From: Octopus sinensis
Taxonomy: Eukaryota
Direction: 5' to 3'
NCBI RefSeq assembly: GCF_006345805.1
Contig: NC_042997.1
Location: 154,814,001 to 154,878,000 of the forward strand
Length of the DNA stretch: 64,000 nucleotides
In this document: positions 12,235 through 63,290 of the stretch, piece after piece
Position numbering within the stretch: position 1 is the stretch's first letter
Layout: the number at the start of each line of letters is the position of its first letter
The notes under the pieces: model-generated
The model's database searches: none
The model's input: only the letters and a program-made list of their open reading frames with translations
Told to the model about the DNA's origin: nothing
Translations under genes and position numbers: made by a program

Positions 12235-13782
12235 GCATATAAATATCTGGAATAAGGATCTTTATCTTTTATCTCATACTTGCTTCAGTCATTAGATTGC
12301 GACCACGCTGGAATACCGTTGTTTGAGATTTAACCGATCAAATCGACCCGGCGCTTTTATTTTTTTAAAGTCTGTTGCTTAATTTATCAAACTCTATTGT
12401 GGAACTGCTAAACAAACCAATCCCGATTGTCAAACCGGTGGGAGAGGATACAAGAACAAAAACCCCACCATATATAGGTGCAAGAGTGGCTGTGCAGTAA
12501 GAAGCTTGCTTACCAACCACATGGTTCGGGTATCAATCCCAATGAGTGGCACCTTGGGCAACTGTCTACTACTATCGCCTCGGACTGACTAAAGCCTTGC
12601 GAGTGAATTTGGTAGGCGGAAACTGAAAGAAGCCCGTCGTATATATGTGTGTATATATATACGTGTGTGTGTCTGTGTGTGTGCGTGTGTGTGTGTATGT
12701 GTGTCTTCCCCACCATTGCTTGACAGCGGATGTTGGTGTGTTTACGTCCTCGTAACTTAGCGGTTCGGCAAAAAAAACATAGAATAAGTACTAAGCTTAC
12801 AAAAAAGTCCTGGGTTTGATTCGTTCGACTAAAGGCGGTGCTCAAGCATGGCCGTAGTCAAATGGCTGAAACAAATAAGAGAATAATAGAATATATATAA
12901 ACATACATACATACATACATACATACATACATACATACATACATACATACATACATAAATACATACATATATGCACAGGGAGCTTCCACACAGTTTCTAT
13001 TTACAAAATTTCTTTCACAAGGCATTGGTCAGCCCAGGCCTATAGTAGGAGACACTTGCCAAAGGTGCCACGGAGTGGGACCGAATACAAAACCACGTTG
13101 AAGCAAGCGAGCTTCTTAATCACATAACCACACATTTACCGAGAGATATAAATTAACATTTATCTTTTCATAACGTACAAGCCCAGACCTGATTTGAACT
13201 GATTTATGATCTAAAGGCATTCTACTAAGACCACTCCATAATCATTGCATAAATAGTATATTTAACACCACGTTACTCACTGCGTCCTTTTTTTTAAGAC
13301 GATAAATTTTAATGAACTGGGATTTGATTATTATTTCTAGCGGAGCAACCACATAGAGGTTTCCTCATTACATACAGCTTAAGTGGCCCACTACTGCAAC
13401 ACCTTCACGATTATAGTATCAACTTCTAGTTAATCGATCTCTTAGGAGTGAAAGCAAAATCCACCTCTACGTTGACTTGAACATTTTTTTTTTAGTTTTT
13501 TACTCCTATGAGATCGATAAAACAAGCAGCAGTTGGTGCTGGCATCAATAGATACACATGTAAAAATGCGTATGCACATAATATATCAACACAGAATACA
13601 TAACAGGAAATATGTTAAAGCACTGACTATATAAATATATATGCAAAACACAAACAAAACGCATACACACACACATACACATACACACATATGTATAATC
13701 TTATTCATAAGTATGCAAATATACATGCATATATGTATGCATATACATACGCACATATTTGCGTGTATGTATATACTTATAC

Positions 13783-13885
<103 letters not shown>

Positions 13886-14942
13886 TTATTTGAGGGAATA
13901 AAATCCAAACTTACAAGGAAAAAATTCAGTTTAGAAATACTAAACCAAATTTCACACAATATAATATATATATATAAAAATTAGAAAGAAAACACCTTTT
14001 ATCAATTCAAAATGAACAATTAAATTACACCATCTAGAAAATTACATATAATAGAAATATTAAAATTAAAATAACAATAAAATGTCAATGATTAAGTAAA
14101 TTGCAAAATAATAATAATAACGTATATATACACACACATATACACGCACATATTATCTTTTGCTTACTTCAGTCATTAGACTGCAGCCATGCTGGGGTAC
14201 CGCCATAAAAGATTTAGTCGAATAAATCGACCCCAGTATTTATCCTTAACTCAGTATTTATTCTATCGGTCTCGTTATGCCGAGTCACTACCTATTGAAA
14301 ACGTAAACAAACCAACACCAGTTGGCAACAGATAGTTGGGGACAAACAAAAACACAAGCGACAGGTTTCTTTCAGTTTCCATCTGCCGAAATCACTCAAC
14401 AGTTTTTGATCGACTCGAGGCTATAGTAGAAAACTCTTGCTCAAGATGCTGCACAGTGTACACAGAATCATGTGGAAAGCGAATTCCTTAAACGCACAGA
14501 CACAATGCCTATATTTATATTTATATATAAATTCGCGCGTAAATAAGCGCAAATGCATGCTTGATTGAATAGTACTGTCTAGGTGCCGAAAGCATAGTGA
14601 TATTTGTTTGGCAGCTGATGATGGAATTACATATCATTATACCTGTTTGTGGATTGTTAGTTTCATTATTCTGAGTTATCCTTCGTTCTAGATTCTAGTA
14701 AAGTGGAAAGTGTTTATCGAGTCATGGTCTGTGGAGATTACTTACATTGATGTTGGTTGTCTGTCTTCATAGAAAATCTTATTAGACTTAGATAAAGCTT
14801 AGATATTGGTGTCTAGTTTTGGAAGTCTTCTGTGGCATATATATCTATACATGTATGTATGTATGTATGTATGTATGTATGTATGTGTGTGTGTATGTAT
14901 GAAATTAGGCACACACACATATATAAATATATATATATATAC

Positions 14943-14979
<37 letters not shown>

Positions 14980-15031
14980 AATTTATATATAGAGGGCATT
15001 ATACATACATGCCAGAGGGCATTATACATAC
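14980..15031. repeat. Inverted repeat arm, perfect reverse complement of 20941-20992 (52 bp; inner 40 bp made of two 17-mers GAGGGCATTATACATAC)
   Basis: Base-by-base comparison: 14992-15031 is the reverse complement of 20941-20980, and the match extends 12 bp outward (AATTTATATATA / TATATATAAATT). Confidence 0.95.
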
Positions 15032-15261
15032 CTCACCCATGTGCTTCGTTGATGTTGATCGGCTTAAGCGGGGCAGGGTCGTTTATTTATGATACATTCA
15101 GGCCTGCTGATGAATACGTAAGTATGAAATCACTGTGATACAGGTCTATATTTTTTTAATGTCTTACTTTGAAAAATTGCATTCGGTGGGATTAGTAATA
15201 TTTTTGGTAGAAATGACTAATTGTCCCTCTTAGCGTGTGGCTTGTATGTATAATGCCCTCT
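15032..15261 (+). repeat. Left copy of ~230-bp hammerhead-bearing direct repeat
   Basis: Matches 20717-20958 except that it lacks AGTTAGCTGATC (12 bp) and has one T/A substitution in the T-run near 15157. Confidence 0.95.
15100..15147 (+). ncRNA. Type I hammerhead ribozyme, copy 1
   Basis: AGGCCUG (stem I) CUGAUGA (core) AUAC-GUAA-GUAU (stem II, GNRA loop) GAAA UCA-CUG-UGAU (stem III) A (cleavage triplet AUA, cut 15140/15141) CAGGUCU (stem I, 7 bp incl. one G-U). All conserved core nucleotides are present. Confidence 0.9.
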
Positions 15262-15519
15262 TATTTCTTTATTATGATTATACAATCGTTACATAGAAGT
15301 ACAAATACAAGACATACATGCAAAAAAAACAATTAAGAGGTTCGATTAAAAATTTTCCATAACATTTGGATTATACATTATAAAAATTCGTCTATAAATT
15401 GTCCTTTACGTAACCAATAGAGTATTATAACATTCCATAAACTTTCGATCTTACCGAAGTTTTAAACCCCGGCAATTTATAAGGCCCCGCAGCTTTTGTT
15501 TCCTCTCCTCCCTCCATAG

Positions 15520-18500
15520 TTAAGCTGGGTTTCTGACACCCACCTTTTTTTCCACTTCCTTCCATCTTTTCTCATACACACCCCGTCGTAAGATCCTCTT
15601 TTCCAGCCCCATTTTGCTCTTCAGATGATATCTGAAGTAAGTGAGCAAGCCGGGGCCCGAGACAAAGGATCCTATCGCGACTCCTTCCATTCTTGTTCGC
15701 CACATGCATTCTTTTACTACTGCAACCGTGCAGTGAAAACATGCCTCACCTTCCTTCGAGAGTCCAGTTGGCGGTATCATCTTAATCATAGACTCAGCCG
15801 ACAGCTGTACTCGTCCCAGATGCGATAACACGTGTTCTGCGTAACTTATCAAGTCGGACAACTTCCGACAGTGTACAAAAGCGTGCTGGACGGTTTCATC
15901 GTCCAACTCGCACCTTGGACACGTCGGTGGCACTGAAATTCCGTGCCGCGATAACTTCTCGCGAACAGGTAAAGCATTCCTATAGCACTGCCAGGCCAGG
16001 GATCTTTGGAAATTATCCAAGTACCCCGTCCTGAAAGTCTTTTTAAACAGGTTGGTAAGCTGGTCTTCGTCAAACCCCAGAGCCCCTCCTAGGACGTCGT
16101 CGTTCTTTGCCTCTACCAGCCTTCTATAAAATACCGAGGTGGTATTTCCGCAGCCGGCCTTGCCCGCCTTGTGGATCAGCGTGAGTGCCTGTCGGCACTC
16201 CTTTTGCCATAAAGTCAGTTTCCATCTTTTGATGCGACCGGGTTTAAAATTCACTAAGGAGGCCGGTCTCGGGAAAACTTCCCCTGCCAGCGGACTCCAC
16301 ACCTTATCACCCTCCAGGTGGTGCCAGAGATGCTTCAGCCTCAACGCATGTCTGCGCATCATCAACCAAGGCATTCCTAACCCACCCTTTAACGGTTCCT
16401 GGCAGCAAACGGAGCGCCTCACAAGTGGCTTTCCTCCCTTCCACAAAAAGCGGAAAAGGATTCGCTCCAACTTGCTAAGCCATGAATCGGGGCAAGGGAC
16501 AACGGTCAGGCGGTAAGTGATTACAGATGCAATGAACATCTGCACCACCTCCACCCTTCCTTTCAAGGACAGAAACCTTCCGGACCAGGTCCGTACTATG
16601 GCCTCCACCTTGCTCGTCACCTCACTCCAGTTCCTCTCCGTTTGGGAGTCTGGCCCAAACCAGACTCCTAGCAACTTAACAGGGCCATCCGTCCAGTGTC
16701 CCACGACACTGGACGATATCGACTTGCTCCTCCAGGTGCCGAGGCGCAAGCCAACCGACTTGTCCTTGTTAACCTTTGCTCCTGCCACCGCCTCGTATCC
16801 TCTGATAGCCTCTTCCACACAAGGTAGCTGGGCCTCATTGGACACGATGAGGGTGACGTCATCCGCATAAGCAGTAACCGTCCTCCCACCTCCGATCTCA
16901 TCCGAGTTGCTTCCCAGCCTCTCCAACTTTCGCAGCAATGGCTCAAGAGCCAACACGTACAAAAGTGGTGACAAGGGGCACCCTTGACGAACTGAACATT
17001 CGATCGAAAACGGTTCCGTTAGGTAACCGTTTATCTGGACGGTGGACTTGATGCCGCTATACATAGCGGAGATCCACCCGCGAAATTCAGGGCCCAGTCC
17101 AGCCGCTTCGAGGACCGTCGCCAGGTACTCATGGTCTACCCTATCGAACGCTTTACTTTGGTCTAAATGGACCATTACCCCGCCCTTGCCGGTTAATTTA
17201 CCCACCCTGTCTAAGGTGTAGCGTATAAGGTGAAGATTGTCCTGGATCGACCTGCCTGGAATTGCACATGTCTGTGCTCTCCCTACAAGTTTCTCCACGA
17301 CAACCGTCAACCTTTTTGCCAACACCTTGGCCAAAATCTTTAACTCTACATTAAGTAGAGTTATGGGCCTGTAGTTACTAATGTTATCCCCCTTGCTCGG
17401 GTCTTTCTGGATTAGCGTCACCACTCCCCGGCTTACAGAACTGGGAATTCTCCCATTCTGCTGCCAGTTCGTGTAGACGCCTGCCAATATTCCCCCGAAC
17501 AAGTCCGGCATACTTTGGTAAAAGTCGTAGGGCAGACCATCCAACCCCGGCGACTTCTCCCCGGCGCATCCGGCCAGTACCCCCTCTATCTCCGCGGGAG
17601 TGATCGCTTCTTCACAGCACTCCACCTCACGCCCCGAGAGCCGCGGTCCGCCGGCCAGGAAGTCCTTTAAGGTCCTCCCCCGCTCCGGCGCCACACCACC
17701 CCCGAACACGCGGGCGAAATGCTGGTGAAGAAACTTTTGCATCTCCTCCTGTCCATAGATCTTTTGTCCCTGTTCGTCAGTTAAAGATTTGATTGAGGCT
17801 TTGTTACCTCTCTGACTCTCCACTCGACGGGCCCATCCGGCAACGTTAATACCTTCTCGTTTCCCAGCGCGTAGCTTAGCTCTGACTCTGCAACCTTCGT
17901 GTTTGGAGTTAAGGTGACGGTACAATACCGTCCTTGCCGCCATCACTCCGGATGCAGAGCCAGCTTCCATTGCCTCGTTTAGATTCTTAACTAAATCGTC
18001 CTCTATCCTAGACCTATCTAACCTTAGCTGATTGCTAAATCTAATGGACTCTGAACGAATGGCTCTTTTGAGGGAGTGCCACCATCTATTGTTAATGATG
18101 GTGCCACACAATGCCCTCTGTACTAACACCTTAATCCGGGTACGGAAGTCTTCACAATTCAAAATAGCCTTGTTCAGCTTCCAGTACCCGGGTCCCTGTC
18201 TATGACACTTGTCTAATTGCATCCTACACGTCACAAATTTGTGATCCGTGTAAGGCACAATGTGAAATTGTGGACAACTAAACGTATCCTTATCTCTTTT
18301 CTTAATAAATATCCTATCTAAATACGATCTGCGTGAGCCGTCGTTGTTACTCCACGTCCACTGTGGAACGCTCGGCTCATCCAGTCGGTAACGGTCCACT
18401 AGATCAAAGCTCTCTAGTAGACCCTTGAGGCTAGGGTTCCCCTTCCTATTGGTTGAGCCAACACTGTCGACCCGCGCTTCAAGGACAGTGTTAAAGTCCC

Positions 18501-18909
18501 CTACTAGGATTACCGTTTTCGACGTCGCTAAAAAGGGCTCCAGGTTCCGAAAAAAACCCGTCTGTCTACTCTCGTTCGGAGCGTAGACAGCTACCAACCT
18601 GAAGGACTGTTTACTTACGTGGGTCACATCCAGAACAACCAGCCTGCCTTCTGGGTCCAGAAAGACAGTACTTACCTGCAAGTCCAAGCTCTTCCTGATA
18701 AGGACTGCCACGCCTCTGCCTCTTCCTCGGCTAGGAGAAATAAATTTCTCGAACCCATTTAGAAGAGGCGAGAACGCTTGGGCCCCGTTCATCTTGGACT
18801 CGGTTGCAATAGCTATGTCTACTCCATGTGTCGTGAGGTCGTCCAGGAAGCAAATTTGTTTCCATTCCGACCCCATTCCACGTACATTCACACAACCCAG
18901 CTTAGCCAT
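15520..18909 (-). CDS. LINE ORF2: apurinic-like endonuclease + reverse transcriptase + C-terminal zinc finger, 1129 aa, uninterrupted
   Basis: APE motifs NVRG, ATES, VYAPN, GDFN, LVDRYR, TWSN, SYLDRIF, TDH. RT motifs KSPGLDGLP, YRPITLLNVELKILAK, LDQSKAFDRVDH, RQGCPLSPLLY, YADD. Cys/His motif CPRCELDDETVQHAFVHC. Confidence 0.97.
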   Translation of the reverse strand: MAKLGCVNVRGMGSEWKQICFLDDLTTHGVDIAIATESKMNGAQAFSPLLNGFEKFISPSRGRGRGVAVLIRKSLDLQVSTVFLDPEGRLVVLDVTHVSKQSFRLVAVYAPNESRQTGFFRNLEPFLATSKTVILVGDFNTVLEARVDSVGSTNRKGNPSLKGLLESFDLVDRYRLDEPSVPQWTWSNNDGSRRSYLDRIFIKKRDKDTFSCPQFHIVPYTDHKFVTCRMQLDKCHRQGPGYWKLNKAILNCEDFRTRIKVLVQRALCGTIINNRWWHSLKRAIRSESIRFSNQLRLDRSRIEDDLVKNLNEAMEAGSASGVMAARTVLYRHLNSKHEGCRVRAKLRAGKREGINVAGWARRVESQRGNKASIKSLTDEQGQKIYGQEEMQKFLHQHFARVFGGGVAPERGRTLKDFLAGGPRLSGREVECCEEAITPAEIEGVLAGCAGEKSPGLDGLPYDFYQSMPDLFGGILAGVYTNWQQNGRIPSSVSRGVVTLIQKDPSKGDNISNYRPITLLNVELKILAKVLAKRLTVVVEKLVGRAQTCAIPGRSIQDNLHLIRYTLDRVGKLTGKGGVMVHLDQSKAFDRVDHEYLATVLEAAGLGPEFRGWISAMYSGIKSTVQINGYLTEPFSIECSVRQGCPLSPLLYVLALEPLLRKLERLGSNSDEIGGGRTVTAYADDVTLIVSNEAQLPCVEEAIRGYEAVAGAKVNKDKSVGLRLGTWRSKSISSSVVGHWTDGPVKLLGVWFGPDSQTERNWSEVTSKVEAIVRTWSGRFLSLKGRVEVVQMFIASVITYRLTVVPCPDSWLSKLERILFRFLWKGGKPLVRRSVCCQEPLKGGLGMPWLMMRRHALRLKHLWHHLEGDKVWSPLAGEVFPRPASLVNFKPGRIKRWKLTLWQKECRQALTLIHKAGKAGCGNTTSVFYRRLVEAKNDDVLGGALGFDEDQLTNLFKKTFRTGYLDNFQRSLAWQCYRNALPVREKLSRHGISVPPTCPRCELDDETVQHAFVHCRKLSDLISYAEHVLSHLGRVQLSAESMIKMIPPTGLSKEGEACFHCTVAVVKECMWRTRMEGVAIGSFVSGPGLLTYFRYHLKSKMGLEKRILRRGVYEKRWKEVEKKVGVRNPA

Positions 18910-18936
18910 TGTCGGTGAGAGAAAAAATAAATGAAC

Positions 18937-20369
18937 TTACGGTTGAGAAAGGGAGCATGACAGTTTAAATCTGCCCGCTTCCCCTTCTTCCTCCCTTGTG
19001 GCCGTAGCTGCAGGGCTCTTAACCGGCGTTGTCACCGGGCTCTGGGTAGGTGTGGTTGCCGGGGTTATTACAAGTTTACCCTCCAGTACTTCTTTTGTTA
19101 CATCTCTAATCAGTCTGTTCTTTAGATGTTCCTGCAGTACTTCCTCCTTCCACCCGTCTTCCCCCACTTTTGCGAAGCGAGTGGTTGCTTTTATGTCAGA
19201 AGCCTTGCTAAATAGTTTAAATTTTGAAAGTTTATAGTATTTATATACCCTTTCGTTTTTTTCATCGAAAGCAATGATCTTATCATTTTTTTTTAAAGAC
19301 TTTTTCACATCTTGTTTTATGGGGAGGGGCTTGGCAAACTGTTTCCCAATGAATACAGTGCCATGGGGGTAGGGCTGGGGAATTTGCTTTATGTGTGTGT
19401 CTGCGGTGCTTGCTGATTTTTTCCTTGTTTGGGGAGGGGAGTCCAGGGTGTTGTCTTTTTTTCTTTTGTGTGTCACCTGTGTAAAATCCATTTGTTCGGT
19501 ACAATCCGTTTCTGTTTCTTTTCTTGTCGTCGTCTTGTTTTCTTTTTCCGCCTTCTCCCCTGCAGTGTTAGAAGCACTTTGAGGAGGGGCTTCAATGGTT
19601 TTCTTTTTTTTTAAGCAGTTCGAGCGGACGTGACCCTTCTCTCCACATTTAAAACATCTAGGTCTGCGCCCCTCCACTGACACTCTCATGGACGTTCCAT
19701 CTTCGTTAAATATCCTATCGGGCAGGTTCTCCAATATCTTGTTCTCCGCCTGAACGAGGAGTTCCAGCGTCTGTCCCTTCCAGCGTACCTCCTCTTTCTT
19801 TCTCATCTGCAGAATCGAAATCTCCCGCTCTACATTGTGCAGGACCGCCGCTGCTACCCACATAATATCATACCCTCTCGGTATGTCCTCTACCAGCAGT
19901 TTAGCTGTTCTTTTTCCCATATACGAGGGTAGCAGCATGATATCATCATTTTTCAGGGTCAACGATGACACCTCTCTTGCTACCTCAGCCGAGTCAAAAT
20001 GTGCTTCAACAGTAGCGCTGCGAGCACCTCGAACGACATGGCGAATTTTGTCCACACCGGGGACAAGCACTTTTCGACAATTTCGTTTCTGACGTCCATA
20101 ATTTTCTTTTCTTTGTAGCTATACACTTTGTATATCACTGTTTTTTCCTTTATTTCTTGTACCTTCGCTTGCGGCGGTACAAGTTTGATCTCGTTTCCTT
20201 CCATTTTCACCAAGTTCCTAAATTCGAATAGTTGTTCGATCTTGAATTCAACGTCCATCATGGTTCCGCCTACCGCGGCCGAAAAAGACTGTTTTGTTAC
20301 TTCCGTGTCCTTTAATTCACTTGTTCCCATCGCGGGAAAATCATTCTTCGACGCCAAGTCGAAATCCAT
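18937..20369 (-). CDS. LINE ORF1 (gag-like, RRM-like region + CCHC knuckle), ~477 aa if one base is restored at ~20071
   Basis: Track ORFs 19980-20369 and 18937-20070 join as ...NEIVEKVLVPGVDKIRH... when one A is added to the GAAAA run (plus-strand TTTT 20071-20074); span 1433 = 3x477+2. Contains CFKCGEKGHVRSNC. Stops 27 nt before the ORF2 ATG. Confidence 0.88.
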
Positions 20370-20546
20370 TTCTCAAAAAAATTACCTCGAAGGTAATAAC
20401 AATTTTAAATACAGAATTTTCTGCCCCGTAGGGCGAAAATTACCGTTACACAACGGGCACTGTTCAAATAACAATTAACACAATCACCGATAAGCAAAAA
20501 TTCGAACTCTCTTAACAAAAGGCAGCAAATTTCTCAAAACGCAGAT

Positions 20547-21105
20547 GAAATTTTTTCTCTTATGAGGTTTTCACGCTATCTACCTGACAATTTCTTGTTA
20601 AGTTTTCCTTATTAAGTAGTTGTCCTTAATTGCTAAATTTTTATTCCGAAAAAACTTTTCCTTCCCGAAATGCAATTCGTAAAAGTATGCCATTTACAGG
20701 ATGTAATATATGTAAACTCACCCATGTGCTTCGTTGATGTTGATCAGTTAGCTGATCGGCTTAAGCGGGGCAGGGTCGTTTATTTATGATACATTCAGGC
20801 CTGCTGATGAATACGTAAGTATGAAATCACTGTGATACAGGTCTATATTTTTTAAATGTCTTACTTTGAAAAATTGCATTCGGTGGGATTAGTAATATTT
20901 TTGGTAGAAATGACTAATTGTCCCTCTTAGCGTGTGGCTTGTATGTATAATGCCCTCTGGCATGTATGTATAATGCCCTCTATATATAAATTAATATGTT
21001 CAATAAGAAATAATTATTTTCGAAATTATTCTCTTATGAGGTTTTCACGCTATCTACCTGACAATTCTTGTTAAGTTTTCCTTATTAAGTAGTTGTCCTT
21101 AATTG

Positions 21106-21108
<3 letters not shown>
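20547..21108 (+). repeat. ~1.2 units of a ~475-bp hammerhead-containing tandem repeat (retrozyme-like), terminal redundancy 20547-20635 = 21022-21108
   Basis: The 87-89 bp segment GAAATT..CTCTTATGAGGTTTTCACGCTATC..AATTGCTA occurs twice, 475 bp apart, and brackets the second hammerhead repeat (20717-20958). Confidence 0.8.
20797..20844 (+). ncRNA. Type I hammerhead ribozyme, copy 2
   Basis: Identical 48-nt sequence to copy 1; predicted cut 20837/20838. Confidence 0.9.
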
Positions 21109-21157
<49 letters not shown>

Positions 21158-21997
21158 TATATATATATTATGCAAGCCACTCCATAATATTTCCACAGTT
21201 GATTCCCAATTCTAATAATTTTTATATTTTAAGTTTAATTATTTTCTTGTATTATAGTGCTCACTTACTTAGTAAATATTGCTTTCATTATTTTATCAGA
21301 CATAATCTTTTTTAAATAAACATCATGGTAGTCCAACTATGTTTAATGTGCGAAAAAATAGCAGCGATCACATAGAGATATTTTAATACCTGTAGTATAT
21401 CAAATAGACATAGCAACATATTCCCTTGCTAATTCTTAGATAACGAGAGAAAGAACATAAGTAAATTTTAATAGGTTGTCCAATATAATTTATTTTCAGT
21501 ATGTATAAACAATAAACTAAGGATATTTACACACCGAATTTAAGTCAACAAAATATCTAATTTTTTCATCTGAAATAACGAAATAAAACTTGAAATGAAA
21601 ATATTGCAATGGATATGTATTAAGTAAATCATTATTAATGAAAACAATTAGAAGCAGGAGAGTGAGACTGTGTTGCAAATGAAAACGAAAGACTTTGTCA
21701 GAACATATTAATATTGTTTATCAAATGTTAAAACCTACTCTGCATTGAACGAAAAGCTTGGCATCAAATATTTAAATTTGTGATAGTAAATAATAGACGC
21801 TTTGAAAGTGCCTTTTTATCGATATATATTAACAGAGGAATTTGTAAAAATTTCCCAGAGTCAAACCTATAATATGCCTATTATGGAGGGTGTGAATAAC
21901 TAACAGACATCACAGAGCTTTATATGTAGATATATAGCTGAGTCAATCTGTTATATATATTTATCATTGATAATTGGTAGAATTTACATAGGTGTGC

Positions 21998-22700: not shown

Positions 22701-23539
22701 TGCATGTTATAAGTGAACGTTCGTTAAAACTATCTTATTTAGCGTGCTGGAAATAGCAACGATCACATAGTTATTATTGCTATACTAACAAAATCACTTT
22801 TTCATTTAAAAGAAAAAAATTCTACCGGTATATTAAAGAATTTTTATTTTATCAAGAATTCGTGAAATTGTGCCTTGTATCAAAGTTATGCAGCTATTTT
22901 GTGTAAACATGAAATGAAAAAAAATCGTATAAATGAAAGCGTGTTAAAAACTATCTTGTTTAGCGTGCTAGAAATAGCAGCGATCACATAGTTATTATTG
23001 TAAGGCTTATAGCCTTCTAAGCAGCTATACCAACAAAATCACTTCATTAAAAAAGAAATTATACCACAATATTAAAGAATTTTCATTTTATCAAAAGTAT
23101 TCATTTAACAAACTCCGGAAATTGATAATATTCTTGAAATTGTGTCTCGTATCAAAGTTATATTGCTATTATTAAATTATCATTAATGGAAATAGAAACT
23201 AGCGAGAATGAGAGACTGTTGCAAATAAAAACGTAAAATATTGTCTGCAACGAATTATTATTTTTTATTATTAAACATTAAAAATCTACTCCGCAGTGAA
23301 TGCAATGAATATTTAAATTTATGAAGAATTGGACGCAGCGACTGAAATGAATAACTAAATTTGCGAGAATTTGGAGTTTAAAAAATTCAGTAAACTTCAG
23401 AAATCGAAATTATAGGAAATTTCTAAGAACTGTGCAAAAGTTTCTGGCTACCGCACAAACCAATCAAAATACAGTGTTTTAGAACAGAAAATGTACATAA
23501 TGAAAATGTATTGCCTAATTTACATTTCAAGAAGTTACT

Positions 23540-27386: not shown

Positions 27387-27435
<49 letters not shown>

Positions 27436-27448
27436 TACACACACACAC

Positions 27449-29248
27449 ATCATCAAACCGGCTGACAAGGGTGGAGCTGTAGTGGTGTGGCGCGCGGACC
27501 TCTATAGGGCCGAGGCTTTCCGCCAACTCAATGACACCTCCTTCTATTCCCCTCTGCCCTCTAACCCCACACGTAGCTACCAACAGACGGTATCCTCTAC
27601 CGTCCAAGACCTCATCTCGTCCTCCGTCTCCTCCGCACCGCATCCAACCTAATTGTGCGAACCCCACGTACCCCCACCATTTACTTCCTCCCCAAAATCC
27701 ACAAACCCAACAACCCTGGCCGCCCCATCGTCTCCGCCTGTAACTGCCCCACGGAGCTCATCTCTAAATACCTCGACCGTGTCCTTGCCCCCCTAGTGGC
27801 ATCTCTTCCCTCCCACATCCACGATACCAACCATGCTCTCCGGCTTTTCAACTCTTTCTCCTTTCCTCCCGGCTCCTCCAAAATCCTTTTTACTATGGAC
27901 ATCCGAAGCCTCTATACTGTTATCCCTCACCACGAAGGACTGCAGGCCCTTCGACACTTTCTTGACCTCCGCTCTAACCCTGTACCTGACACCTCCACAC
28001 TCATTCGTCTGGCCGAACTTGTCCTTACTCTGAACTGCTTCTCGTTCGCGGGCGAGTTCTACCATCAGGTCTCGGGAGTGGCCATGGGAACGCGAATGGG
28101 CCCCAACTATGCGAACCTGTTCGTTGGCTATGTTGAGGCCCAAATATTCTCTAATTTCACTGGTCCCACTCCTGAACTATATGGTCGTTATATGACGACA
28201 TTATCGGTGCCACCTCACTCTCCCGCGAACATCTAGATTCCTTCCTCTCTTTCGTCCAATCTTTCCATCCAGCCCTCCACTTCACTTCCACTATCTCCAA
28301 CACCTCTGTCTCCTTCCTCGACATTTCGGTTAGCATTCTTCACTCCACTCTTACCACCTCCATTCACTACAAACACACAGACTCACACTCATACCTCAAC
28401 TTCTCTTCCTCCCACCCAGAACACACCAAGCTTTCCATCCCCTATTCCCAATTCCTCCGTCTACGTAGGCTCTGTAGTGACGACCATGACTTTGAGACTC
28501 AGTCTCAACGTATGGCTCACCACTTCACCCTACGTGGATACCCCCTCACCACTATCCACACCGCCCTTGCCAGAGCACGGTCCGTGGACCGTGTATCTGC
28601 TCTCTCTCCCCGAACCCGCCCTGTAGTCTCCCGCCTCCCTTTTCCCCTCACTTACCACCCCACGACCCTACGTCTCCAACGCACCATTCTTCGAGCTTTC
28701 CGTCATCTCCAGTCCGACCCGTCCACTTCACACCTCTTCCCTAACCGACCCCTCCCCTCTTTCAAACGAGCCCACAACCTTCGAGACCTTTTGGTCCATA
28801 GCTCCTTCCCTGACCCTACCTCCCAACCCGGCTCGTTCCCCTGCTCCCGCCCACGTTGCCGCACTTGCCCTTACCTCTCCAAAACACCACCCGCCTCACT
28901 AGCACCCACCATCGACCCTATCCCATCATCCACTCCTTCACCTGCACCTCCAGCAATATTATCTATTGCATCTCTTGCTCTCTCTGCAATTCCTTGTACA
29001 TCGGACAAACGGGACGCCGCTTGGCTGACCGGTTCGCGGAACACCTTCGTGACATCCACCTTGCGAACGACACACCGGTCTCACGCCATTTCCGCTCCAC
29101 CGGTCACTCCTTGCAACACCTATCTGTGTTCGGTTTGTCCTTACACAGAGGCCATCCGGATTCCCGTTTGCGCCGTGAACAGGAATTAATCTTCTCTCTT
29201 CGCTCTTATACGCCATTTGGTCTCAACTCTCCCCCCCTCCTCTTCTAA
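27449..29248 (+). pseudogene. Penelope-like RT + GIY-YIG endonuclease ORF, three 1-bp deletions, no in-frame stops
   Basis: YFLPKIHKPNNPGRPIVS, FTMDIRSLYT, GVAMGTRMGPNYANLF, RY(I)DDI (frameshift ~28192), FLDISV, HYKHTDSHSYL, CSRPRCRTC, IIYCISCSLCNSLYIGQTGRRLADRFAEH. Other shifts at ~27625 and ~28881. Confidence 0.93.
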
Positions 29249-46088: not shown

Positions 46089-47321
46089 TTATTAATTCCT
46101 CATAAGGTGGCGAGCTGACAGAAACGTTAACCTCCCGGGCGAAATGCTTAAAGGTATTTCGTCTGCCTTTACGTTCTGAGTTAAAATTCCGTCGAGGTCG
46201 ACTTTGCCTTTCATCCTTTCGGGGTCGATAGATTAAGTACCAATTACGCACTGGGGTCGATGTAATCAACTTAATCCATTTGTCTGTCCTTGTTTGTCCT
46301 CCTTTATGTGGGCAATAAAGAAATAATTATTAATTCATCATAACATAAATGGTAATGTAATAAAATAATGAGAGGGTAAAAATAAATACGACAGTGTATC
46401 ATTTCAATGTTTACAATGAGTCTACCACGATGGAGTTTAGTCCCAACGAAATCATTTACTAAATAAATACAAATAACGAGTAAATATTTTGTTCACTATA
46501 TATATCTATAGCATCTGAATTAAGTAAATCGTACAGTTAATAGCTCTTGTATAACTTCACTTATCGCTTTTAATCCATCTAGATGCATTTGTGTACTAAT
46601 GCATTCATGGTTTTATCTGTGGGGTAAGTTTGGATAGTGAAAGAAAAATTTAGCTTGTATTTCAAAGTATGCTTTAGGTTTTAGTATTTAATAGTCGTTC
46701 TAGAGACAACCATTATTTTATATTCCAATGATAGCATCAGTGTAAGGCAGGCAAATTATAATTAACAGCCTGAAAATGAAATTAACGTAACTAACCAGTT
46801 TTGCATCTGGAAATAAACTAGAAAGGAATTCTGACAAAATATAATTATGAGCGGATGTTATAAATCAGTCAACATTTATTATCACTAAGCTTCCATCTTC
46901 ACATCATATCGCTCGTGACCACAGCAGCTAAATCCCAACAAGCAGCAGCAGCCAAAATCGGGAATATCCTGCCATTGTTCTTTAAGGGAACACGTTTAAA
47001 ATTATATATATCCTGTTGTCTACATTTATTACACATAACTTTACTGAGTATAATTTGTACCCTAGGGAACAGGCTGGTATCCGCAAATTTACTTCTAAAT
47101 ATGTATGACTCTGTGGCAAGGCTAAAGTTAATTTGTGTATGAGAAAGTTAGACGTTTATATTTTATATAGTGTACCATGCAGTTTCATATGAAGGGTTGT
47201 GGATTGGCAGAATCGTTAGAATGTCAAACGAAATAACTTCTGGTATGTGTTTCGGCACTTTCCATTCTGAATCCAACTCTTACACAGATATACTTGTGTT
47301 TAAATATCTTTTTCTACTCTT

Positions 47322-47522
47322 AGCACAAGACCCGAAATTTTGGGGGGAGGGGGCCAGTCGATTAGATCGACGCCAGTACGCAGCTGGTACTTAATTTATC
47401 GACCCCGAAAGGATGAAAGGCAAAGTCGACCTCGGAGGAATTTGAACTCAGAACGTAACGGCAGACGAAATACGGCTACGCATTTCACCCGGCGTGCTAA
47501 CGTTTCTGCCAGCTCGCCGCCT
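47322..47522 (-). mobile_element. SINE family B copy
   Basis: Reverse complement of the family B consensus with few differences. Confidence 0.85.
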
Positions 47523-47717
47523 TCTGTTTAAATATCGAAATCAGTTTACTCATCAACAGATTTGTGACAACAAGCAATGGGTTAGAATCGTGCTGTAGGA
47601 CCCAAATCTTCAGTGCTAAGTGTAACTCTCTTTGTCATTGCCAACACAATACACACATATATCTTATCATTCACTCAGACACATACACATACACATACAT
47701 ACAGAGTCTCTCTTATT

Positions 47718-47765
<48 letters not shown>

Positions 47766-47869
47766 ATTTTTTCTTTCTACATAAAGTAAACCCCTGATAT
47801 GTGTGTCTATATGGAATATTTAAGAGTATATAAGTATGTATATAAATACGTACACTACATATATGTAAG

Positions 47870-48240
47870 CGCAAGAGTTGCTGTATGGTAAGAGGCTTGC
47901 TTCCCAACCACATAGCTCCGGGTTCAGTTCCACTGCGTGACACCTTGGGCAAGTGTCTTCTACTATAGCCTCGGGCTGACTAAAGTCATGTGAGTAGATT
48001 TGGTAGACGGAAACTGTAAGAAGCCTTCGTGTATATATATCTATGTGTGTGTGTGTATTTTTGTCAGTGTTTGCCCTCCCCCACTATCGCTTGACAACCA
48101 TTGCGGTTCGGCATAAGAGACCGATAGAATAAGTAGTAGGCTTATAAAGAATAAATCCTGGGGTAGATTTGCTCGACTAAAGGCGGTGCTCCAGCATGGC
48201 CGCAATCAAATGACTGAAACAAGTAAAAGAATAAAAGAAT
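47870..48240 (+). mobile_element. SINE family A copy
   Basis: GCGCAAGAGTTGCTGTATGG..GGTTCAGTTCCAC head, family body and AAAAGAATAAAAGAAT tail. Confidence 0.85.
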
Positions 48241-48580
48241 ATCTATATACTATATACATATAACTAGTTGTTTTCTCTTTACGGGATCAGCATCTGTGTG
48301 TCGCTTTAAAAGTATATACTGTGACCACGAGCGAGTGGCTGCTATCTCTAACCGGCGGTTGTCCTGTACCGACGAAGGGAAATTACCCAGAAACCATTGG
48401 TCTGCAGGTATCGCTATGGCTAGAAAGGGGGCAGTAGACTCTCTTTCTCACAGTTTACTGACACAGACCATGTGTCGGTAGCCAGCTGGAAAAGATATTT
48501 TCTTGGGGCTAAAAAGTAGTAACATCGTCCTACGTTGGACTTTGCCACTTTGCGTTGGCAAATAGACATTATGTGTGTGC

Positions 48581-48616
<36 letters not shown>

Positions 48617-49604
48617 AACTCTTGGCCTTCGAGTTACTCTGTAGCTTCTACCAGTTAAACGTGTATATATGTGTTTGTGTATGTGTGTGTGTTTGCGCGC
48701 GCGTGAGTGAGTGAAAATTTTTGCCATTAAAATTTATCGAGAAAAGATCTTGAAAACACAATTTAACACAGATCTAATGGAAGATGATTTTTGCTGTCTT
48801 CGATTTTTAAACAAGTAGAGACTACTAAAGTGTTTTCCATATTTTTTATACTCTAGGCACAAGGCCCGAGAATATTTTTGGTGGCTATGGGGCCAGTCGA
48901 CTACATCGATTAGATCGACCCCAATACGCAACTGGTACTTTATTTATCAACCCCGAAAGGATGAAAGGCAAAGTCAACCTCGGCGAAATTTGAACTCGGA
49001 ACATAAAGACAGGCGAAAAATGTTTCTATATTACTAACCGTTCGGTAGTTGTCTTTATTTTCCGTTTAGTTTGAAGATTTTTACAAAATATTCTTCTCTT
49101 ACTTTGTAATTGTTCATTTTCTTCTTTCATTTTGCAAAAGCGGAATATTTTGAACTTCCCATTTGCGTAGATGTCGAATAGTTCATTACAAAGAATATTT
49201 CTTACAGATCGACCATTGTTTTGTTATTTATGTTCCTTGACTTAGTCCGTTCATTTTGCTTCCGTGACCAATATAGTTTTTACTGAACTGTTAACAAATA
49301 ATGCAGTAAATTAGGTATTTTGTTTAGCTATTCAGCTTTTACTTTAGCCTTCAATGCTTTACCATTCTCGAGTTTTTGAATGATATCATATGTCCCATGA
49401 CAAAGATCTTCACATTTTGACATCCGCTTTATTTCTTCTAATGTAAATTTCGTCTTTCTTAAGAGTCTTTTATGATTATTTTTGTTATCTTCGACAGTTT
49501 CTATTTCAGGACTTTGCACGGCGCGAGCTAGCAGAATCGTTAACACGCCGGATAAAATGCTTAGCAGTATTTCGTTGCTGTTAAATAATGTTGCTGTTAA
49601 ACTA

Positions 49605-50154
49605 CAGTAACACCTTACGAGGATCCACTTTACCAGACCCTGGTTTTACGAGTGTTATTTTTCAAGCACGAGATTCAAATTTTGAACAAAGTGCAAGAGT
49701 TTCTACCACCATAACAAATGCTTCTGTATGTTACCGAGAAATTTATAAAGAGCGAAAATAAACTTTCTTCTTAGTAAACAACTTTAGACTTATTTTTTTT
49801 AAATAAATATACAAGTCCGTCTACTAGTGCTTGTGAGTTGACGATCGCGTCTACAAATGATCGTGTGCACGAATCTAGTGCGAGCGAAAGTGATTCAGAA
49901 AACGAATATAATCATTTTTTTATTATAAATGATCTTGACATTCCTTTCACTTTACATAAAATATTATTTACATTCTACTGTTGCTTTATTGCAATTTATA
50001 TACGAGTATCATAAATTTCATAGGTTAAATATTTTTCTGGGAACGAATTACAATTCATAACATAGCTACTATGAGAAATTATTGCTGTTTTACGAGTTTT
50101 CGCTTTACGAGAGGTCTCCTGGAACACATTAACTCCATTATCGAGGCATTACTG
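49605..50154. mobile_element. Tigger-type MITE, 550 bp
   Basis: TA|CAGTAACACCT ... CGAGGCATTACTG|TA termini and repeated internal TTACGAG motifs. Confidence 0.7.
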
Positions 50155-51869
50155 TATATACAATGCCATCTATAGAAAAGACTACTCTGCAATAGATATA
50201 AAGATCTCTGCTATTGACTGTTTATAAATTTGTATCAACACTAAGAATATAAGTATTCTACAAATATTTCCATCAAAACTAAGATGGTGAGCTGGCAGAA
50301 TCGTTTGTACTCCGGGAAAAAAATGCTTATCTGCATTTCGACCGTCCTGAAGTTCTGAGTTCAAATTCCGTCGAGGTTGACTTTGATTTTCAACCCTTTT
50401 GAGGTCGATAAAGTAACTACCAGCTGCACAGTGGGATCGATGTAATCGATTTACCCATTCGCTCCGGATTTGTTGGCTTATTGCCAAAAGTCGAAACCAA
50501 TATTTCCATCAATACGTCCACCATGTACGAGCATAACAGGCCTGGTAAAATTGTTTGTGACAGATAGGAAAATTATGCACAATCACTAAGTAATCGCTGC
50601 ATTGAAGATGTGAACACCTAAAGCCAAAATCAGTGAGAAAGGGAATATTTACGGCAACTGCTACGGAGTCTACAGCTTCTCTTCTCAGAGGATAAATTCA
50701 CACTTATACCTATAATTAGCGATGATATGAAATGCAAATGTGACAATCAAGAAAATGTTGCCAGGCAAAGTAACCAAAGGACAAGTATTTGGCAATCGCT
50801 CACAGTTTTTATTTCTAATTACTGAAAATATTTTTTTAAAAATTAATCCCATTGTAGCGCACTGGAATCAAAGGCTCTAATTTGATCTTAGACCCGAGGT
50901 TAATGTGTTAATGAAGAATAGAATTAGAGAGCAAACATTCTAATCACTAATGAAGTGCCAAAAACATTTATAGAGAATTGTATTTGTAAATACAAAACTA
51001 TATAATTAATTTTAAAAAATAAAATAAATGTAAGTGATGTGGCACTCTGAAGCAGCCATAGTCAATAAAAGCTGATGGGCAAGTGCATTCACTGAATAAT
51101 TGAATTGCTTAAAAAATGCTACATTGGCAGCTTGTAAATTGACTATTCTATAGCAGGCTAGTTTATATAGATTAGTTTGTGGTATGGTAGTTTCAACGGT
51201 AAACAAAGTGAGTGGTCACAGAATTGGTAGGAGATTAAGTAACTTAAAGAGAGAGATTGGTTGCGGATTAACTAAAAGATAGTGGGGGTGCTTTTGTAGA
51301 AGTGATGCAATTATTAATTTTATTGACATAAAGTATACTAAATCGAAAGAATTAAAAGATGAAAATGCATCTAATGTAAATTAATTTATAATAAAATTTA
51401 TATTATACATACATTATATTACACACAAACACATACACACACACTCACCCACACGCATATATTTATATATATATATATATATATATATGCATAGAACATA
51501 ATACATAAATACATACATACACACATGCATATATACATACATACATACACACACATACATACATACATACATACATACATACATACATACATACATACAT
51601 ACATACATACACACACATACATACATACATACATACATACATACATACATACATACATACATACATACATACATACATACATACACACACATGCTGGAAT
51701 CGACTCATGTCCGAATAAAACCATTTTCCATGCGCATTTCCCTCTAAGAAGCATCTCAATTTTGATGTCCTCATTACTGATGACGTTTCATCTGGGTCGT
51801 AAGGCCTGCAAAATAATAACAAGTCAGCCCCTATCCCCAACCCTCAGCAGCAGCCTGATCATCTGGACG

Positions 51870-62924: not shown

Positions 62925-63290
62925 AGAAACAAAGACAACACGAGTTCAACAAGGATGTACATATGTGATCTTTCAGACGGTGAGCACGTGAACTAACCCG
63001 CTTGCATTTTCTCCTGGCTCTTTTCTCGTTATCTCTTTTCCTCTCTTTTCTCAAGCATCTGATGAAGATCTATGTCCGAAACGTTCTAACTTTGTTTTCC
63101 TTCTTTAACCGTCAACCTATTGACTGTGAACGCCCCTTGAACATTTGTTGCTCATTTTTGCTATTTGTAATTGTTTTGCTTTATTTATTGCACGCTTACG
63201 TGCGCCTTCCATGTGTTTCGAACCGATAATTTCGAGTAACTTAGATCTCGGATTACGCCGAAGATTTTTCCCAAATGATGTTACACACAC
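62925..63290 (+). mobile_element. Probable solo Penelope-type terminal repeat containing hammerhead core CTGATGA..GAAACGT (63059-63085)
   Basis: Pyrimidine-rich leader, then CTGATGA AGATCTATGTCC GAAACGTT. Stem II is weak and stem I is not supported. Confidence 0.5.

What the first reader, a model, noticed from the sequence alone, without database searches (positions are those of the whole stretch)
15100..20844. Two complete type I hammerhead ribozymes in the direct repeats flanking an intact LINE
Seen: identical 48-nt motifs at 15100-15147 and 20797-20844 with every core nucleotide (CUGAUGA, GAAA, AUA triplet), 7-bp stem I, 4-bp stem II with GUAA loop and 4-bp stem III. Stem I can extend (ACAUU 15094-15098 with AAUGU 15158-15162) across a U-rich bulge. 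Established: in type I hammerheads, loop II contacts a stem I internal loop for fast cleavage. Inference: these are functional ribozymes. They are antisense to the LINE, so they would cut plus-strand transcripts rather than LINE mRNA, releasing a 5697-nt RNA that is almost entirely antisense LINE and could circularise.
Basis: partly seen in the sequence, partly recalled or inferred. Interest (0 to 1): 0.9.

Follow-up and report, generated by a model that had tools for sequence, protein, structure and literature searches.

The report
Duplicated hammerhead motif around a LINE insertion
Both hammerhead ribozyme motifs are really there, but they are one motif from a small repeat element, copied when a LINE landed in that element, so the ribozyme-LINE pairing looks accidental and cleavage is unproven.

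Summary
Identical 48-nt type I hammerhead motifs lie at 15100-15147 and 20797-20844 (+), with a complete core, helices of 7, 4 and 4 bp, an AUA cleavage triplet, and cut sites 5697 nt apart. A minus-strand L1-group LINE lies between them.

- **One motif, not two.** The motifs sit in a 230/242-bp direct repeat that differs by one base and one 12-nt indel. That repeat lies inside a roughly 293-bp element with perfect 40-bp terminal inverted repeats. The simplest reading is that a young LINE inserted into this element and duplicated 230 bp of target.
- **Activity is unproven.** Rfam gives 16.6 bits against a 52-bit threshold. A model I built from tested retrozyme hammerheads gives 27.5 bits (E about 1e-4). 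The monomer is predicted to misfold, and two copies are predicted to form a double hammerhead, as in many animal hammerheads.
- **No further copies.** None could be found, so covariation is untestable here.
- **LINE not clearly intact.** ORF2 is intact, but ORF1 changes frame near its start.
- **Context.** The window also holds a decayed Penelope-like element and a third, mutated hammerhead relic.

Verdict: a new member of a known kind in an incidental nested-transposon arrangement. Interest is modest.

The parts
14992..15031 (+). Left 40-bp terminal inverted repeat of the small host element (17-mer GAGGGCATTATACATAC, spacer ATGCCA, 17-mer again)
   Evidence: (inverted repeat I6). It is perfectly complementary to 20941-20980.
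15032..15261 (+). Left copy of the direct repeat (230 bp), abutting the LINE 3' end. It carries hammerhead copy 1 and ends with the inner 17-mer of the right-hand inverted repeat
   Evidence: One substitution (15157) and one 12-nt indel separate it from the right copy.
15100..15147 (+). Hammerhead motif copy 1 (type I). Predicted cleavage is between 15140 and 15141
   Evidence: Rfam Hammerhead_HH9 gives 16.6 bits. Model R1 gives 27.5 bits, E 9e-05.
15262..20716 (-). L1-group LINE, about 5.46 kb. Its 3' end reads AATAAAGAAATAA(A) with no poly(A) run. The 5' boundary is assumed to lie at the start of the right repeat copy
   Evidence: No other copy is present in the window.
15520..18909 (-). LINE ORF2, 1129 aa, uninterrupted: endonuclease, reverse transcriptase and zf-RVT domains
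   Evidence: Pfam. Human L1 ORF2p structures match at E 1e-69 over residues 8-907. The closest relative in the protein database is 57% identical.
18937..20070 (-). LINE ORF1 main frame (377 codons, CCHC zinc knuckle), lacking an in-frame ATG near its start
   Evidence: It aligns from its residue 17 to residue 11 of the ORF1 of a related LINE.
19980..20369 (-). ATG-initiated 129-codon ORF in a different frame that overlaps the start of ORF1. It implies a frame change in an A-run near 20065-20075 (mutation, sequencing error or frameshifting)
20549..20644 (+). 96-nt block A, inside the presumed LINE 5' UTR. It is 94% identical to block A' outside the element
   Evidence: (D6, D7).
20717..20958 (+). 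Right copy of the direct repeat (242 bp, with a 12-nt insertion at 20745-20756), abutting the LINE 5' end. It carries hammerhead copy 2
20797..20844 (+). Hammerhead motif copy 2, identical to copy 1. Predicted cleavage is between 20837 and 20838
20941..20980 (-). Right 40-bp terminal inverted repeat. Its inner 17-mer (20941-20957) is part of the direct repeat
   Evidence: Joining the two flanks gives a 293-nt unit whose ends form a 40-bp perfect stem.
21023..21117 (+). Block A', a diverged copy of block A, lying 42 nt beyond the right inverted repeat and followed by a (TA)n run. Its relation to the LINE is unexplained
   Evidence: It is more diverged than the direct repeat (Fisher p = 0.009).

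Best explanation
A small non-coding element of about 293 bp, bounded by perfect 40-bp terminal inverted repeats and sitting in TA-rich DNA, carries one hammerhead motif of the animal type I kind. A young L1-group LINE inserted into the right-hand inverted repeat of this element in the opposite orientation. The integration duplicated 230 bp of target, namely the whole body of the element plus the inner 17-mer of the repeat. The single motif therefore now appears twice, 5697 nt apart, bracketing the LINE on its antisense strand.

The hammerhead most likely descends from the retrozyme and Penelope-associated hammerheads that are common in invertebrate genomes. Like many of them it has a weak, nearly palindromic helix III. 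It would cleave, if at all, mainly when two copies pair as a double hammerhead. The bracketing of the LINE is a by-product of nesting rather than a LINE-processing device.

Shown here: the motif, the repeats, the inverted repeats, the LINE domains, and the fold predictions. Inferred: the order of events, the origin of the repeat as a target-site duplication, and any catalytic activity.
For: Motif:
- It is complete and identical at both sites.
- It fits the published descriptor CUGANGA / GAAAY / RUH (supplement of PMC7229834).
- It fits the published animal type I architecture: helix I about 6 bp, helix II 4 bp, and a short palindromic helix III that works as a dimer (PMC4209133).
- Covariance model R1, built only from four tested retrozyme hammerheads plus the Rfam HH9 consensus, ranks the two sites first in the window at 27.5 bits, E 9e-05. 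The background is below 10 bits.
- Rfam HH9 aligns with the expected structure.
- For two copies, the predicted minimum-energy structure is the double hammerhead, at -31.1 against 2 x -12.1 kcal/mol.

Locus anatomy:
- Both repeat copies abut the LINE exactly.
- They differ by one base and one indel in 230 bp.
- The outer 40-bp inverted repeats match 40 of 40, and the joined flanks give a hairpin-ended 293-nt unit.
- LINE ORF2 is uninterrupted, so the insertion is young.

Genome context:
- A decayed Penelope-like element lies at 27407-29248.
- An independent hammerhead relic lies at 48363-48408. Hammerhead-bearing repeats are thus at home in this genome.

Precedent: an L1-group LINE nested in a DNA-transposon-like element is known from Tx1L in Tx1D (PMC1950540).
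Against: - A 230-bp target-site duplication is far longer than the roughly 15 bp usual for full-length L1 insertions. Extremely long duplications are reported mainly for aberrant insertions in cultured cells (PMC2912911).
- A 12-nt indel in 230 bp of repeat sits oddly beside about 4.5 kb of LINE coding sequence with at most one frame change.
- The 96-nt block A in the presumed LINE 5' UTR recurs 65 nt outside the insertion site. This model does not explain that.
- No second copy of the small element was found anywhere. Its status as a mobile family and the conservation of the hammerhead are both untested.
- The TA-rich flanks make its own target duplication ambiguous at 2-8 bp.
- Rfam support is far below threshold.
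Confidence: 0.5

Rival explanations
1. The locus already held a head-to-tail dimer of a 230-242-bp hammerhead repeat, like an animal non-LTR retrozyme. The LINE then landed between the two monomers. The two hammerheads pre-date the LINE and once formed an ordinary two-copy retrozyme-like array.
For: - Unit sizes of 230 and 242 bp, GC below 50% and a type I hammerhead match non-LTR retrozymes. Those are 170-400 nt, and coral monomers are 220-245 bp with length variants caused by a roughly 20-nt insertion (PMC7229834).
- The 12-nt indel between the copies is natural for two older monomers.
- A dimer-dependent hammerhead makes sense in a tandem array.
- A Penelope-like element, the proposed mobiliser of retrozymes, is present in the window (bioRxiv 10.64898/2026.07.22.740005).
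Against: - Homology stops exactly one unit to each side of the LINE. The array would have had exactly 2.0 units and the LINE would have hit the junction to the base, a chance of roughly 1 in 230.
- The array would also be enclosed by perfect 40-bp inverted repeats, which retrozymes are not described as having.
- No further monomers occur in the window.
- The circular fold of the 230-nt unit is not strongly rod-like.
Confidence: 0.17
2. One reading: the hammerhead-bearing repeats and the LINE form a working unit. Plus-strand transcripts are cut at both ribozymes, releasing a 5697-nt antisense-LINE RNA that may be circularised, for example as a regulator or a mobile intermediate.
For: - The two complete motifs have the same orientation and cut sites 5697 nt apart.
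- Two copies are predicted to pair as a double hammerhead.
- Hammerhead-flanked RNAs are circularised in retrozymes (PMC7229834).
- Only four canonical poly(A) hexamers lie on the plus strand between the sites.
Against: - Relatives of this LINE on four contigs carry no hammerhead.
- The outer inverted repeats show that the repeat belongs to a separate small element.
- In Penelope-like elements, described as an ORF between two flanking repeats that carry the hammerheads (PMC4209133), the ORF encodes a GIY-YIG endonuclease. Here ORF2 is of the L1 type and the motifs are antisense to it.
- The monomer is predicted to misfold, and pairing across 5.7 kb is less likely than in 300-nt tandems.
- There is no evidence of a plus-strand promoter or transcript.
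Confidence: 0.05
3. The motif is a chance look-alike in AT-rich repetitive DNA. It does not descend from a hammerhead and is inactive. It appears twice only because the segment was duplicated.
For: - There is only one independent instance.
- About 0.7 motifs of this quality are expected per Gb by chance.
- Rfam gives 16.6 bits against a threshold of 52, and nothing in wider searches.
- Helix II is weak, with A-U at 10.1-11.1.
- No recognisable loop-loop contact is present.
- The 86-nt context folds no better than shuffles, z = -0.17.
Against: - Only about 5e-5 are expected per window.
- Model R1 gives E 9e-05 in the window.
- The nearly palindromic helix III and the predicted double hammerhead are specific traits of animal hammerheads.
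- The same window holds a Penelope-like element and a second, unrelated hammerhead relic. Real hammerhead descendants probably far outnumber chance hits in this genome.
Confidence: 0.13
4. The right-hand copy was brought in with the LINE. Either the reverse transcriptase switched template from the LINE RNA 5' end to an RNA or DNA of the small element, or a 5'-transduced flank was copied. The 5' junction was then resolved by annealing to the homologous target.
For: - Extra sequence at LINE 5' junctions is known, and chimeric LINE insertions with other RNAs are reported (PMC2912911, for 5' extra nucleotides; abstract of PMC13174262, listed, for chimeras).
- It could accommodate the 12-nt difference and the odd block A next to the junction.
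Against: It needs both a template switch onto the same element family that happens to be the target and a junction that restores the inverted repeat exactly. Nothing here points to it directly.
Confidence: 0.05

Closest known systems
Canonical animal type I hammerhead ribozymes of non-LTR retrozymes (coral, mussel, axolotl; PMC7229834) and the Rfam family Hammerhead_HH9
   Same: - Type I topology and a complete CUGANGA/GAAAY/RUH core.
- Helix I of 6-7 bp and helix II of 4 bp.
- A short, nearly palindromic helix III that favours a double hammerhead.
- Residence in an AT-rich unit of about 230-240 bp.
   Different: - Loop 2 is a GUAA tetraloop rather than the 5-6-nt loops of the reference sequences.
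- Pair 10.1-11.1 is A-U.
- No recognisable loop 1/loop 2 contact.
- Not in a tandem array: the two copies are separated by a LINE.
- The unit is enclosed by 40-bp inverted repeats.
- The Rfam score is far below threshold.
Hammerheads in the flanking repeats (pLTRs) of Penelope-like elements (PMC4209133)
   Same: Two hammerheads in the same orientation lie in direct repeats that flank a reverse-transcriptase-encoding element a few kb long. The motifs are dimer-dependent.
   Different: - The enclosed element is an L1-group LINE with an apurinic-type endonuclease, not a Penelope-like element with GIY-YIG.
- The motifs are antisense to it.
- The motif is canonical-like rather than the minimal Penelope type (long helix II, no helix III).
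- The true Penelope-like remnant in the window (27407-29248) carries no detectable hammerhead.
Tx1L/Tx1D composite elements of Xenopus laevis: an L1-group LINE inserted in an apparent DNA transposon (PMC1950540)
   Same: A LINE with an apurinic-type endonuclease is nested inside a small element with terminal inverted repeats. It is precisely joined, without a long poly(A) tail.
   Different: - Site specificity cannot be shown from one insertion.
- The flanking duplication here is 230 bp.
- Clade membership (Tx1 versus L1 proper) was not resolved.
- Tx1D is not reported to carry a hammerhead, to my knowledge.
Miniature inverted-repeat transposable elements (MITEs)
   Same: About 293 bp, non-coding, perfect terminal inverted repeats, TA-rich insertion site, hairpin-forming.
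   Different: - The target duplication is ambiguous.
- No other copy has been seen, so mobility and family status are unproven.
- A hammerhead inside such an element is not a described feature, to my knowledge.

Membership tests
Hammerhead ribozyme, type I | Conserved core: C3 U4 G5 A6 N7 G8 A9, G12 A13 A14, the A15.1-U16.1 pair, and H17 not G | tested here: met
   CUGAUGA, GAAA, A-U closing helix III, and H17 = A at both sites.
Hammerhead ribozyme, type I | Three helices around the core, with helix I open and helices II and III closed by loops | tested here: met
   Helices of 7, 4 and 4 bp. The same architecture is recovered by the Rfam HH9 alignment and by model R1.
Hammerhead ribozyme, type I | Score at or above the Rfam gathering threshold of a hammerhead family | tested here: not met
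   No match at gathering or at E <= 10 in 6.5 kb or 131 nt. Hammerhead_HH9 reaches 16.6 bits against 52 only when 54 nt are searched.
Hammerhead ribozyme, type I | Tertiary contact between loop 2 and a loop or bulge of helix I, needed for fast cleavage at physiological Mg2+ | tested here: inconclusive
   Loop 2 is GUAA. The proposed helix I extension across a U-rich bulge is disfavoured by 1 kcal/mol and is absent from the minimum-energy fold. Tertiary contacts are not modelled by these tools.
Hammerhead ribozyme, type I | Core conservation and helix covariation among homologous copies | not testable with these tools
   There is only one independent copy. No relatives turned up in the window, in metagenome, viral or prokaryotic contigs, or through translated-ORF look-up.
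Hammerhead ribozyme, type I | Site-specific self-cleavage | not testable with these tools
   This needs in vitro transcription. The prediction is that the monomer misfolds (helix III probability about 3%) and that the dimer forms a double hammerhead.
Animal non-LTR retrozyme | Type I hammerhead inside a unit of about 170-400 bp with low GC | tested here: met
   The units are 230 and 242 bp, and the window GC is 0.37. The criteria come from PMC7229834.
Animal non-LTR retrozyme | Head-to-tail tandem copies, in a multicopy family | tested here: inconclusive
   The two copies are separated by a 5.46-kb LINE, and removing it leaves either one or two units. No other copy is present in the window.
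Animal non-LTR retrozyme | Expression as linear and circular RNAs of unit length | not testable with these tools
   No expression data are available.
Penelope-like element with hammerhead-bearing flanking repeats | Flanking repeats enclose an ORF with a Penelope-type reverse transcriptase and a GIY-YIG endonuclease | tested here: not met
   The enclosed ORF2 has Exo_endo_phos, RVT_1 and zf-RVT domains and matches L1 ORF2p. The motifs are antisense to it.
L1-group LINE | ORF2 with an apurinic-type endonuclease and a reverse transcriptase; ORF1 upstream | tested here: met
   Caveat: ORF1 shows a frame change near its start.
L1-group LINE | Short target-site duplication (about 15 bp in L1) and a 3' poly(A) tail | tested here: not met
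   The flanking repeat is 230 bp, and the 3' end is AATAAAGAAATAA(A) without an A-run. The usual values come from PMC2912911.
MITE-like element with terminal inverted repeats | Terminal inverted repeats, a target-site duplication, and multiple genomic copies | tested here: inconclusive
   The inverted repeats match 40 of 40. The TA-rich flanks allow a duplication of 2-8 bp but do not prove one. No other copy was found.

The most novel reading that the evidence does not exclude
The LINE insertion created, by accident or by selection, a working two-hammerhead cassette. Plus-strand read-through transcripts fold into a double hammerhead across 5.7 kb, and a 5697-nt antisense-LINE RNA is excised and ligated into a circle. 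This would be a giant retrozyme-like circular RNA that could feed antisense small-RNA silencing of this LINE family.

A milder novel reading is that hammerheads also ride in a family of DNA-transposon-like elements with terminal inverted repeats. I would give that about 0.25.
Probability: 0.04. Interest if true: 0.8.

Novelty: new member of a known kind. Interest (0 to 1): 0.3.

Why it matters
If the hammerhead is active, this adds one more lineage to the very large set of animal type I hammerheads. It also offers a natural example of how a transposon insertion can turn a lone, dimer-dependent ribozyme into a two-copy cassette.

The more useful lesson is for interpretation. Two identical ribozyme motifs bracketing a retrotransposon need not be part of that retrotransposon. 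Here the outer inverted repeats and the exact abutment of the repeats show that the pair arose from duplication of one host element.

The unusually long duplication (230 bp), at an inverted-repeat element that can form a hairpin, may interest people who study LINE integration at structured DNA.

Tried and rejected
- **Rfam.** Searches at gathering threshold and at E <= 10 over 64 kb, 6.5 kb and 131 nt gave no hammerhead. The only hits were microsatellite-driven microRNA look-alikes at 14836-14947.
- **Other copies of the motif, the 17-mer or the element body.** Scans of metagenome, viral and prokaryotic genome contigs gave only chance matches without hammerhead helices.
- **Translated-ORF trick.** I looked for the longest stop-free translation of the element among 5.8 billion predicted proteins, hoping to catch spurious ORFs on other copies. 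Nothing came back.
- **Exact look-up of LINE ORF2.** It is not on record. The source genome appears to be absent from the collections, and the best relative is 57% identical.
- **Contigs of LINE relatives.** L001, L002, L009 and L010 carry no hammerhead, and L011, the locus of a Penelope-like relative, has no sequence similar to the element. L011 holds only a minimal Penelope-type motif unrelated to ours.
- **Third CTGATGA...GAAA match at 63059-63081.** Rejected, because it has no helices.
- **One older tandem duplication explaining both the 230-bp repeat and block A/A'.** Rejected, because A/A' is significantly more diverged (p = 0.009).
- **A Penelope-like origin for the enclosed ORF.** Rejected on its domains.
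- **Identifying the assembly GCA_024449705.1 or the organism through the paper library.** This failed.
- **The original Tx1 papers.** They are not held in the library.
- **First alignment of reference hammerheads.** MAFFT misaligned the helices. I replaced it with an N-padded ungapped alignment.

Full report
**1. The observation**

The 48-nt sequence AGGCCTGCTGATGAATACGTAAGTATGAAATCACTGTGATACAGGTCT is present and identical at 15100-15147 and 20797-20844 on the + strand. Read as RNA, it has every invariant hammerhead position:
- CUGAUGA, GAA, and the A15.1-U16.1 pair.
- H17 = A, in an AUA triplet. AUA occurs in natural hammerheads, for example eggplant latent viroid (abstract of PMC1636495, listed).
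- Helix I of 7 bp, including one G-U.
- Helix II of 4 bp (AUAC/GUAU), closed by a GNRA-type GUAA loop.
- Helix III of 4 bp (AUCA/UGAU), with a CUG loop.

Helices II and III are closed and helix I is open, so the motif is type I. The predicted cut sites are 15140/15141 and 20837/20838, exactly 5697 nt apart.

**2. Is it more than chance?**

- The simple pattern CTGATGA-N12-GAAA is expected 0.05 times per window.
- My full descriptor finds only these two sites in the window. It finds 0.04 loose hits per shuffled window, and no strict hit in 300 shuffles or in 40 Mb of composition-matched simulated sequence.
- Extrapolating from the 9 loose hits in 40 Mb gives about 5e-5 strict hits per window, but about 0.7 per Gb. 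Counting alone therefore cannot exclude a single chance hit somewhere in a large genome. The two sites are also one independent instance.
- Rfam is weak. It reports nothing at gathering score and nothing at E <= 10 in 6.5 kb or 131 nt. Hammerhead_HH9 reaches 16.6 bits against a threshold of 52 when only 54 nt are searched, although the alignment has exactly the expected architecture.
- As an independent test I built covariance model R1. It uses four experimentally tested retrozyme hammerheads (coral, mussel and two axolotl; supplementary table 2 of PMC7229834) plus the Rfam HH9 consensus. Searching the whole window without filters, the two sites rank first at 27.5 bits, E 9e-05 (a rough calibration). 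The background is below 10 bits.
- The same search revealed a third, unrelated site at 48363-48408 (26.3 bits). It looks like a decayed hammerhead, with U4 changed to C and an A.A at the base of helix II.
- The window also holds a decayed Penelope-like element at 27407-29248, with a reverse transcriptase and a GIY-YIG motif. Its relatives are 55-70% identical, and the named ones come from corals.

Together these show that hammerhead-bearing repeats live in this genome. That raises the odds that the motif is a true hammerhead descendant.

**3. Would it cleave?**

- The 48-mer's minimum-energy fold forms helices I and II. It then pairs UGAU of the core with AUCA, destroying helix III.
- The active fold is 2.4 kcal/mol worse than that, and helix III has about 3% probability.
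- For two copies, the predicted minimum-energy structure is the classic double hammerhead. It has an 11-position intermolecular helix III (10 pairs and a central U.U) and both cores free, at -31.1 against 2 x -12.1 kcal/mol.
- This is the behaviour described for most animal type I hammerheads: a short palindromic helix III and activity as dimers (PMC4209133; PMC7229834).

Three points count against high activity:
- The 10.1-11.1 pair is A-U. Four of the five reference sequences have G-C.
- Loop 2 differs from the reference loops.

Activity remains untested.

**4. Anatomy of the locus**

- The direct repeat runs 15032-15261 and 20717-20958. The two copies differ by T/A at 15157/20854 and by a 12-nt insertion at 20745-20756.
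- Outside them lie perfect 40-bp inverted repeats at 14992-15031 and 20941-20980. Each is made of the 17-mer GAGGGCATTATACATAC twice, with a 6-nt spacer. The inner right-hand 17-mer belongs to the direct repeat and therefore also occurs at 15244-15260.
- The flanks on both sides are TA-rich (TATATATA).
- Joining the flanks gives a 293-nt unit whose ends form a 40-bp perfect stem, with the hammerhead in the middle.
- Between the repeats lies a minus-strand L1-group LINE.
  - ORF2 is 1129 aa and uninterrupted, with endonuclease, reverse transcriptase and zf-RVT domains. It matches human L1 ORF2p at E 1e-69.
  - ORF1 has a CCHC knuckle, but its 377-codon frame has no ATG near its start. An ATG-initiated 129-codon ORF overlaps it in another frame, which implies a one-base frame change in an A-run near 20065-20075.
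  - The 3' end carries AATAAA but no poly(A) run.
- Neither the LINE nor the small element has another copy in the window.

**5. How the pair arose**

Both repeat copies abut the LINE exactly, and homology stops exactly one unit away on each side. A target duplication made at integration explains this automatically. A pre-existing tandem dimer would need exactly two units and an insertion at the junction to the base. A composite LINE with its own terminal repeats would leave the perfect outer inverted repeats unexplained. I therefore favour insertion of a young LINE into a small inverted-repeat element, with a 230-bp target duplication.

This model has three weaknesses:
- The duplication is far longer than the usual 15 bp or so (PMC2912911).
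- The 12-nt indel is unexpected next to about 4.5 kb of nearly undamaged coding sequence.
- A 96-nt block in the presumed LINE 5' UTR (20549-20644) recurs at 21023-21117, 42 nt beyond the right inverted repeat. It is significantly more diverged than the 230-bp repeat (p = 0.009), so it belongs to a different and older event. I cannot explain it.

Both break points lie at the top of the hairpin that the inverted repeats can form. Breakage provoked by that structure could lie behind the long duplication, but that is inference only.

**6. Comparison with known systems**

- The motif works like, and probably belongs with, the canonical animal type I hammerheads of non-LTR retrozymes. The 230-242-bp unit is the size of cnidarian retrozyme monomers. 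Tandem arrangement and family membership could not be shown, and inverted repeats are not a retrozyme trait.
- It is not a Penelope-like flanking-repeat system, because the enclosed ORF is of the L1 type and antisense.
- The nesting of an L1-group LINE in a DNA-transposon-like element has a precedent in Tx1L/Tx1D (PMC1950540).

**7.

The architecture, the orientation and the arithmetic are right. 'Functional ribozymes' and the 5697-nt circular antisense RNA are untested inferences. The evidence that the pair is one duplicated motif belonging to a separate small element makes a dedicated LINE-processing role unlikely (about 5%). Four canonical poly(A) hexamers on the plus strand between the sites would not forbid such a transcript, but nothing shows that it exists.

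**8. What failed**

- No further copies of the motif, the 17-mer or the element were found in metagenome, viral or prokaryotic contigs, or through translated-ORF look-up.
- The LINE's exact ORF2 is not on record, and its best relative is 57% identical.
- Contigs of LINE relatives carry no hammerhead.
- The source organism could not be identified.
- The decisive covariation test therefore has to be run on the source genome.

**Verdict**

This is a real and complete hammerhead motif of the animal type I kind, present twice because of a LINE-associated duplication. It is a new member of a known kind in an incidental nested-transposon arrangement. Interest is modest (0.3).

Noticed in passing
window 48363-48408 (+): A third hammerhead-like site, found only by model R1 (26.3 bits, E 1.9e-4): CCUGUA-CCGACGA-AGGG-AAAUUA-CCCA-GAAA-CCAUUGG-UC-UGCAGG. 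It has type I architecture with a GUC triplet, but U4 is changed to C in the core and there is an A.A at the base of helix II. It is probably a decayed canonical hammerhead. Its surroundings are unique in the window and unrelated to the 293-bp element.
   Followed up: partly
window 27407-29248 (+): A decayed Penelope-like retroelement. It has reverse-transcriptase ORF fragments (27655-28236, weak RVT_1 match) and a GIY-YIG motif (28856-29248, 21.4 bits), split over several frames. Relatives are 55-70% identical in large eukaryotic contigs, and the named ones are from stony corals. No hammerhead was detected beside it.
   Followed up: partly
window 20549-20644 and 21023-21117 (+): A 96-nt block is repeated at 94% identity, once inside the presumed LINE 5' UTR and once just outside the right inverted repeat. 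It is more diverged than the 230-bp repeat (p = 0.009). Its origin is unexplained.
   Followed up: partly
window 19980-20369 and 18937-20070 (-): LINE ORF1 is split between two overlapping frames. The change lies in an A-run near 20065-20075. It could be a real frameshift, a homopolymer sequencing error or programmed frameshifting.
   Followed up: partly
window 46100-50450: Several copies, in both orientations, of a repeat of about 80-170 nt (for example 46101-46271, 47356-47526, 48899-49025 and 50321-50453 at 78-88% identity), together with SINE-like sequence carrying embedded GT/TA microsatellites around 47900-48250.
   Followed up: no
window 13624-13905, 14826-15017, 21099-21179 and many other sites: Very dense TA, GT and GTAT microsatellites. 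They produce spurious sub-threshold Rfam matches to microRNA families (mir-297, mir-466) at 14836-14947.
   Followed up: no
window 22726-22779 and 22947-23000 (+): A 54-nt direct repeat at 94% identity, 221 nt apart. A similar stretch (…AATAGCAGCGATCACATAG…) occurs near 21350-21375.
   Followed up: no
window 63059-63081 (+): CTGATGAAGATCTATGTCCGAAA matches the bare core spacing of a hammerhead but has no helix I, II or III. I take it to be chance.
   Followed up: yes
L011 about 576 (-), an ENA eukaryotic contig holding a relative of the window's Penelope-like element: A minimal Penelope-type hammerhead candidate (GACU-CUGAAGA-long helix II-GAAAC-GU-C-AGUC), unrelated in sequence to the window's motif.
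   Followed up: no
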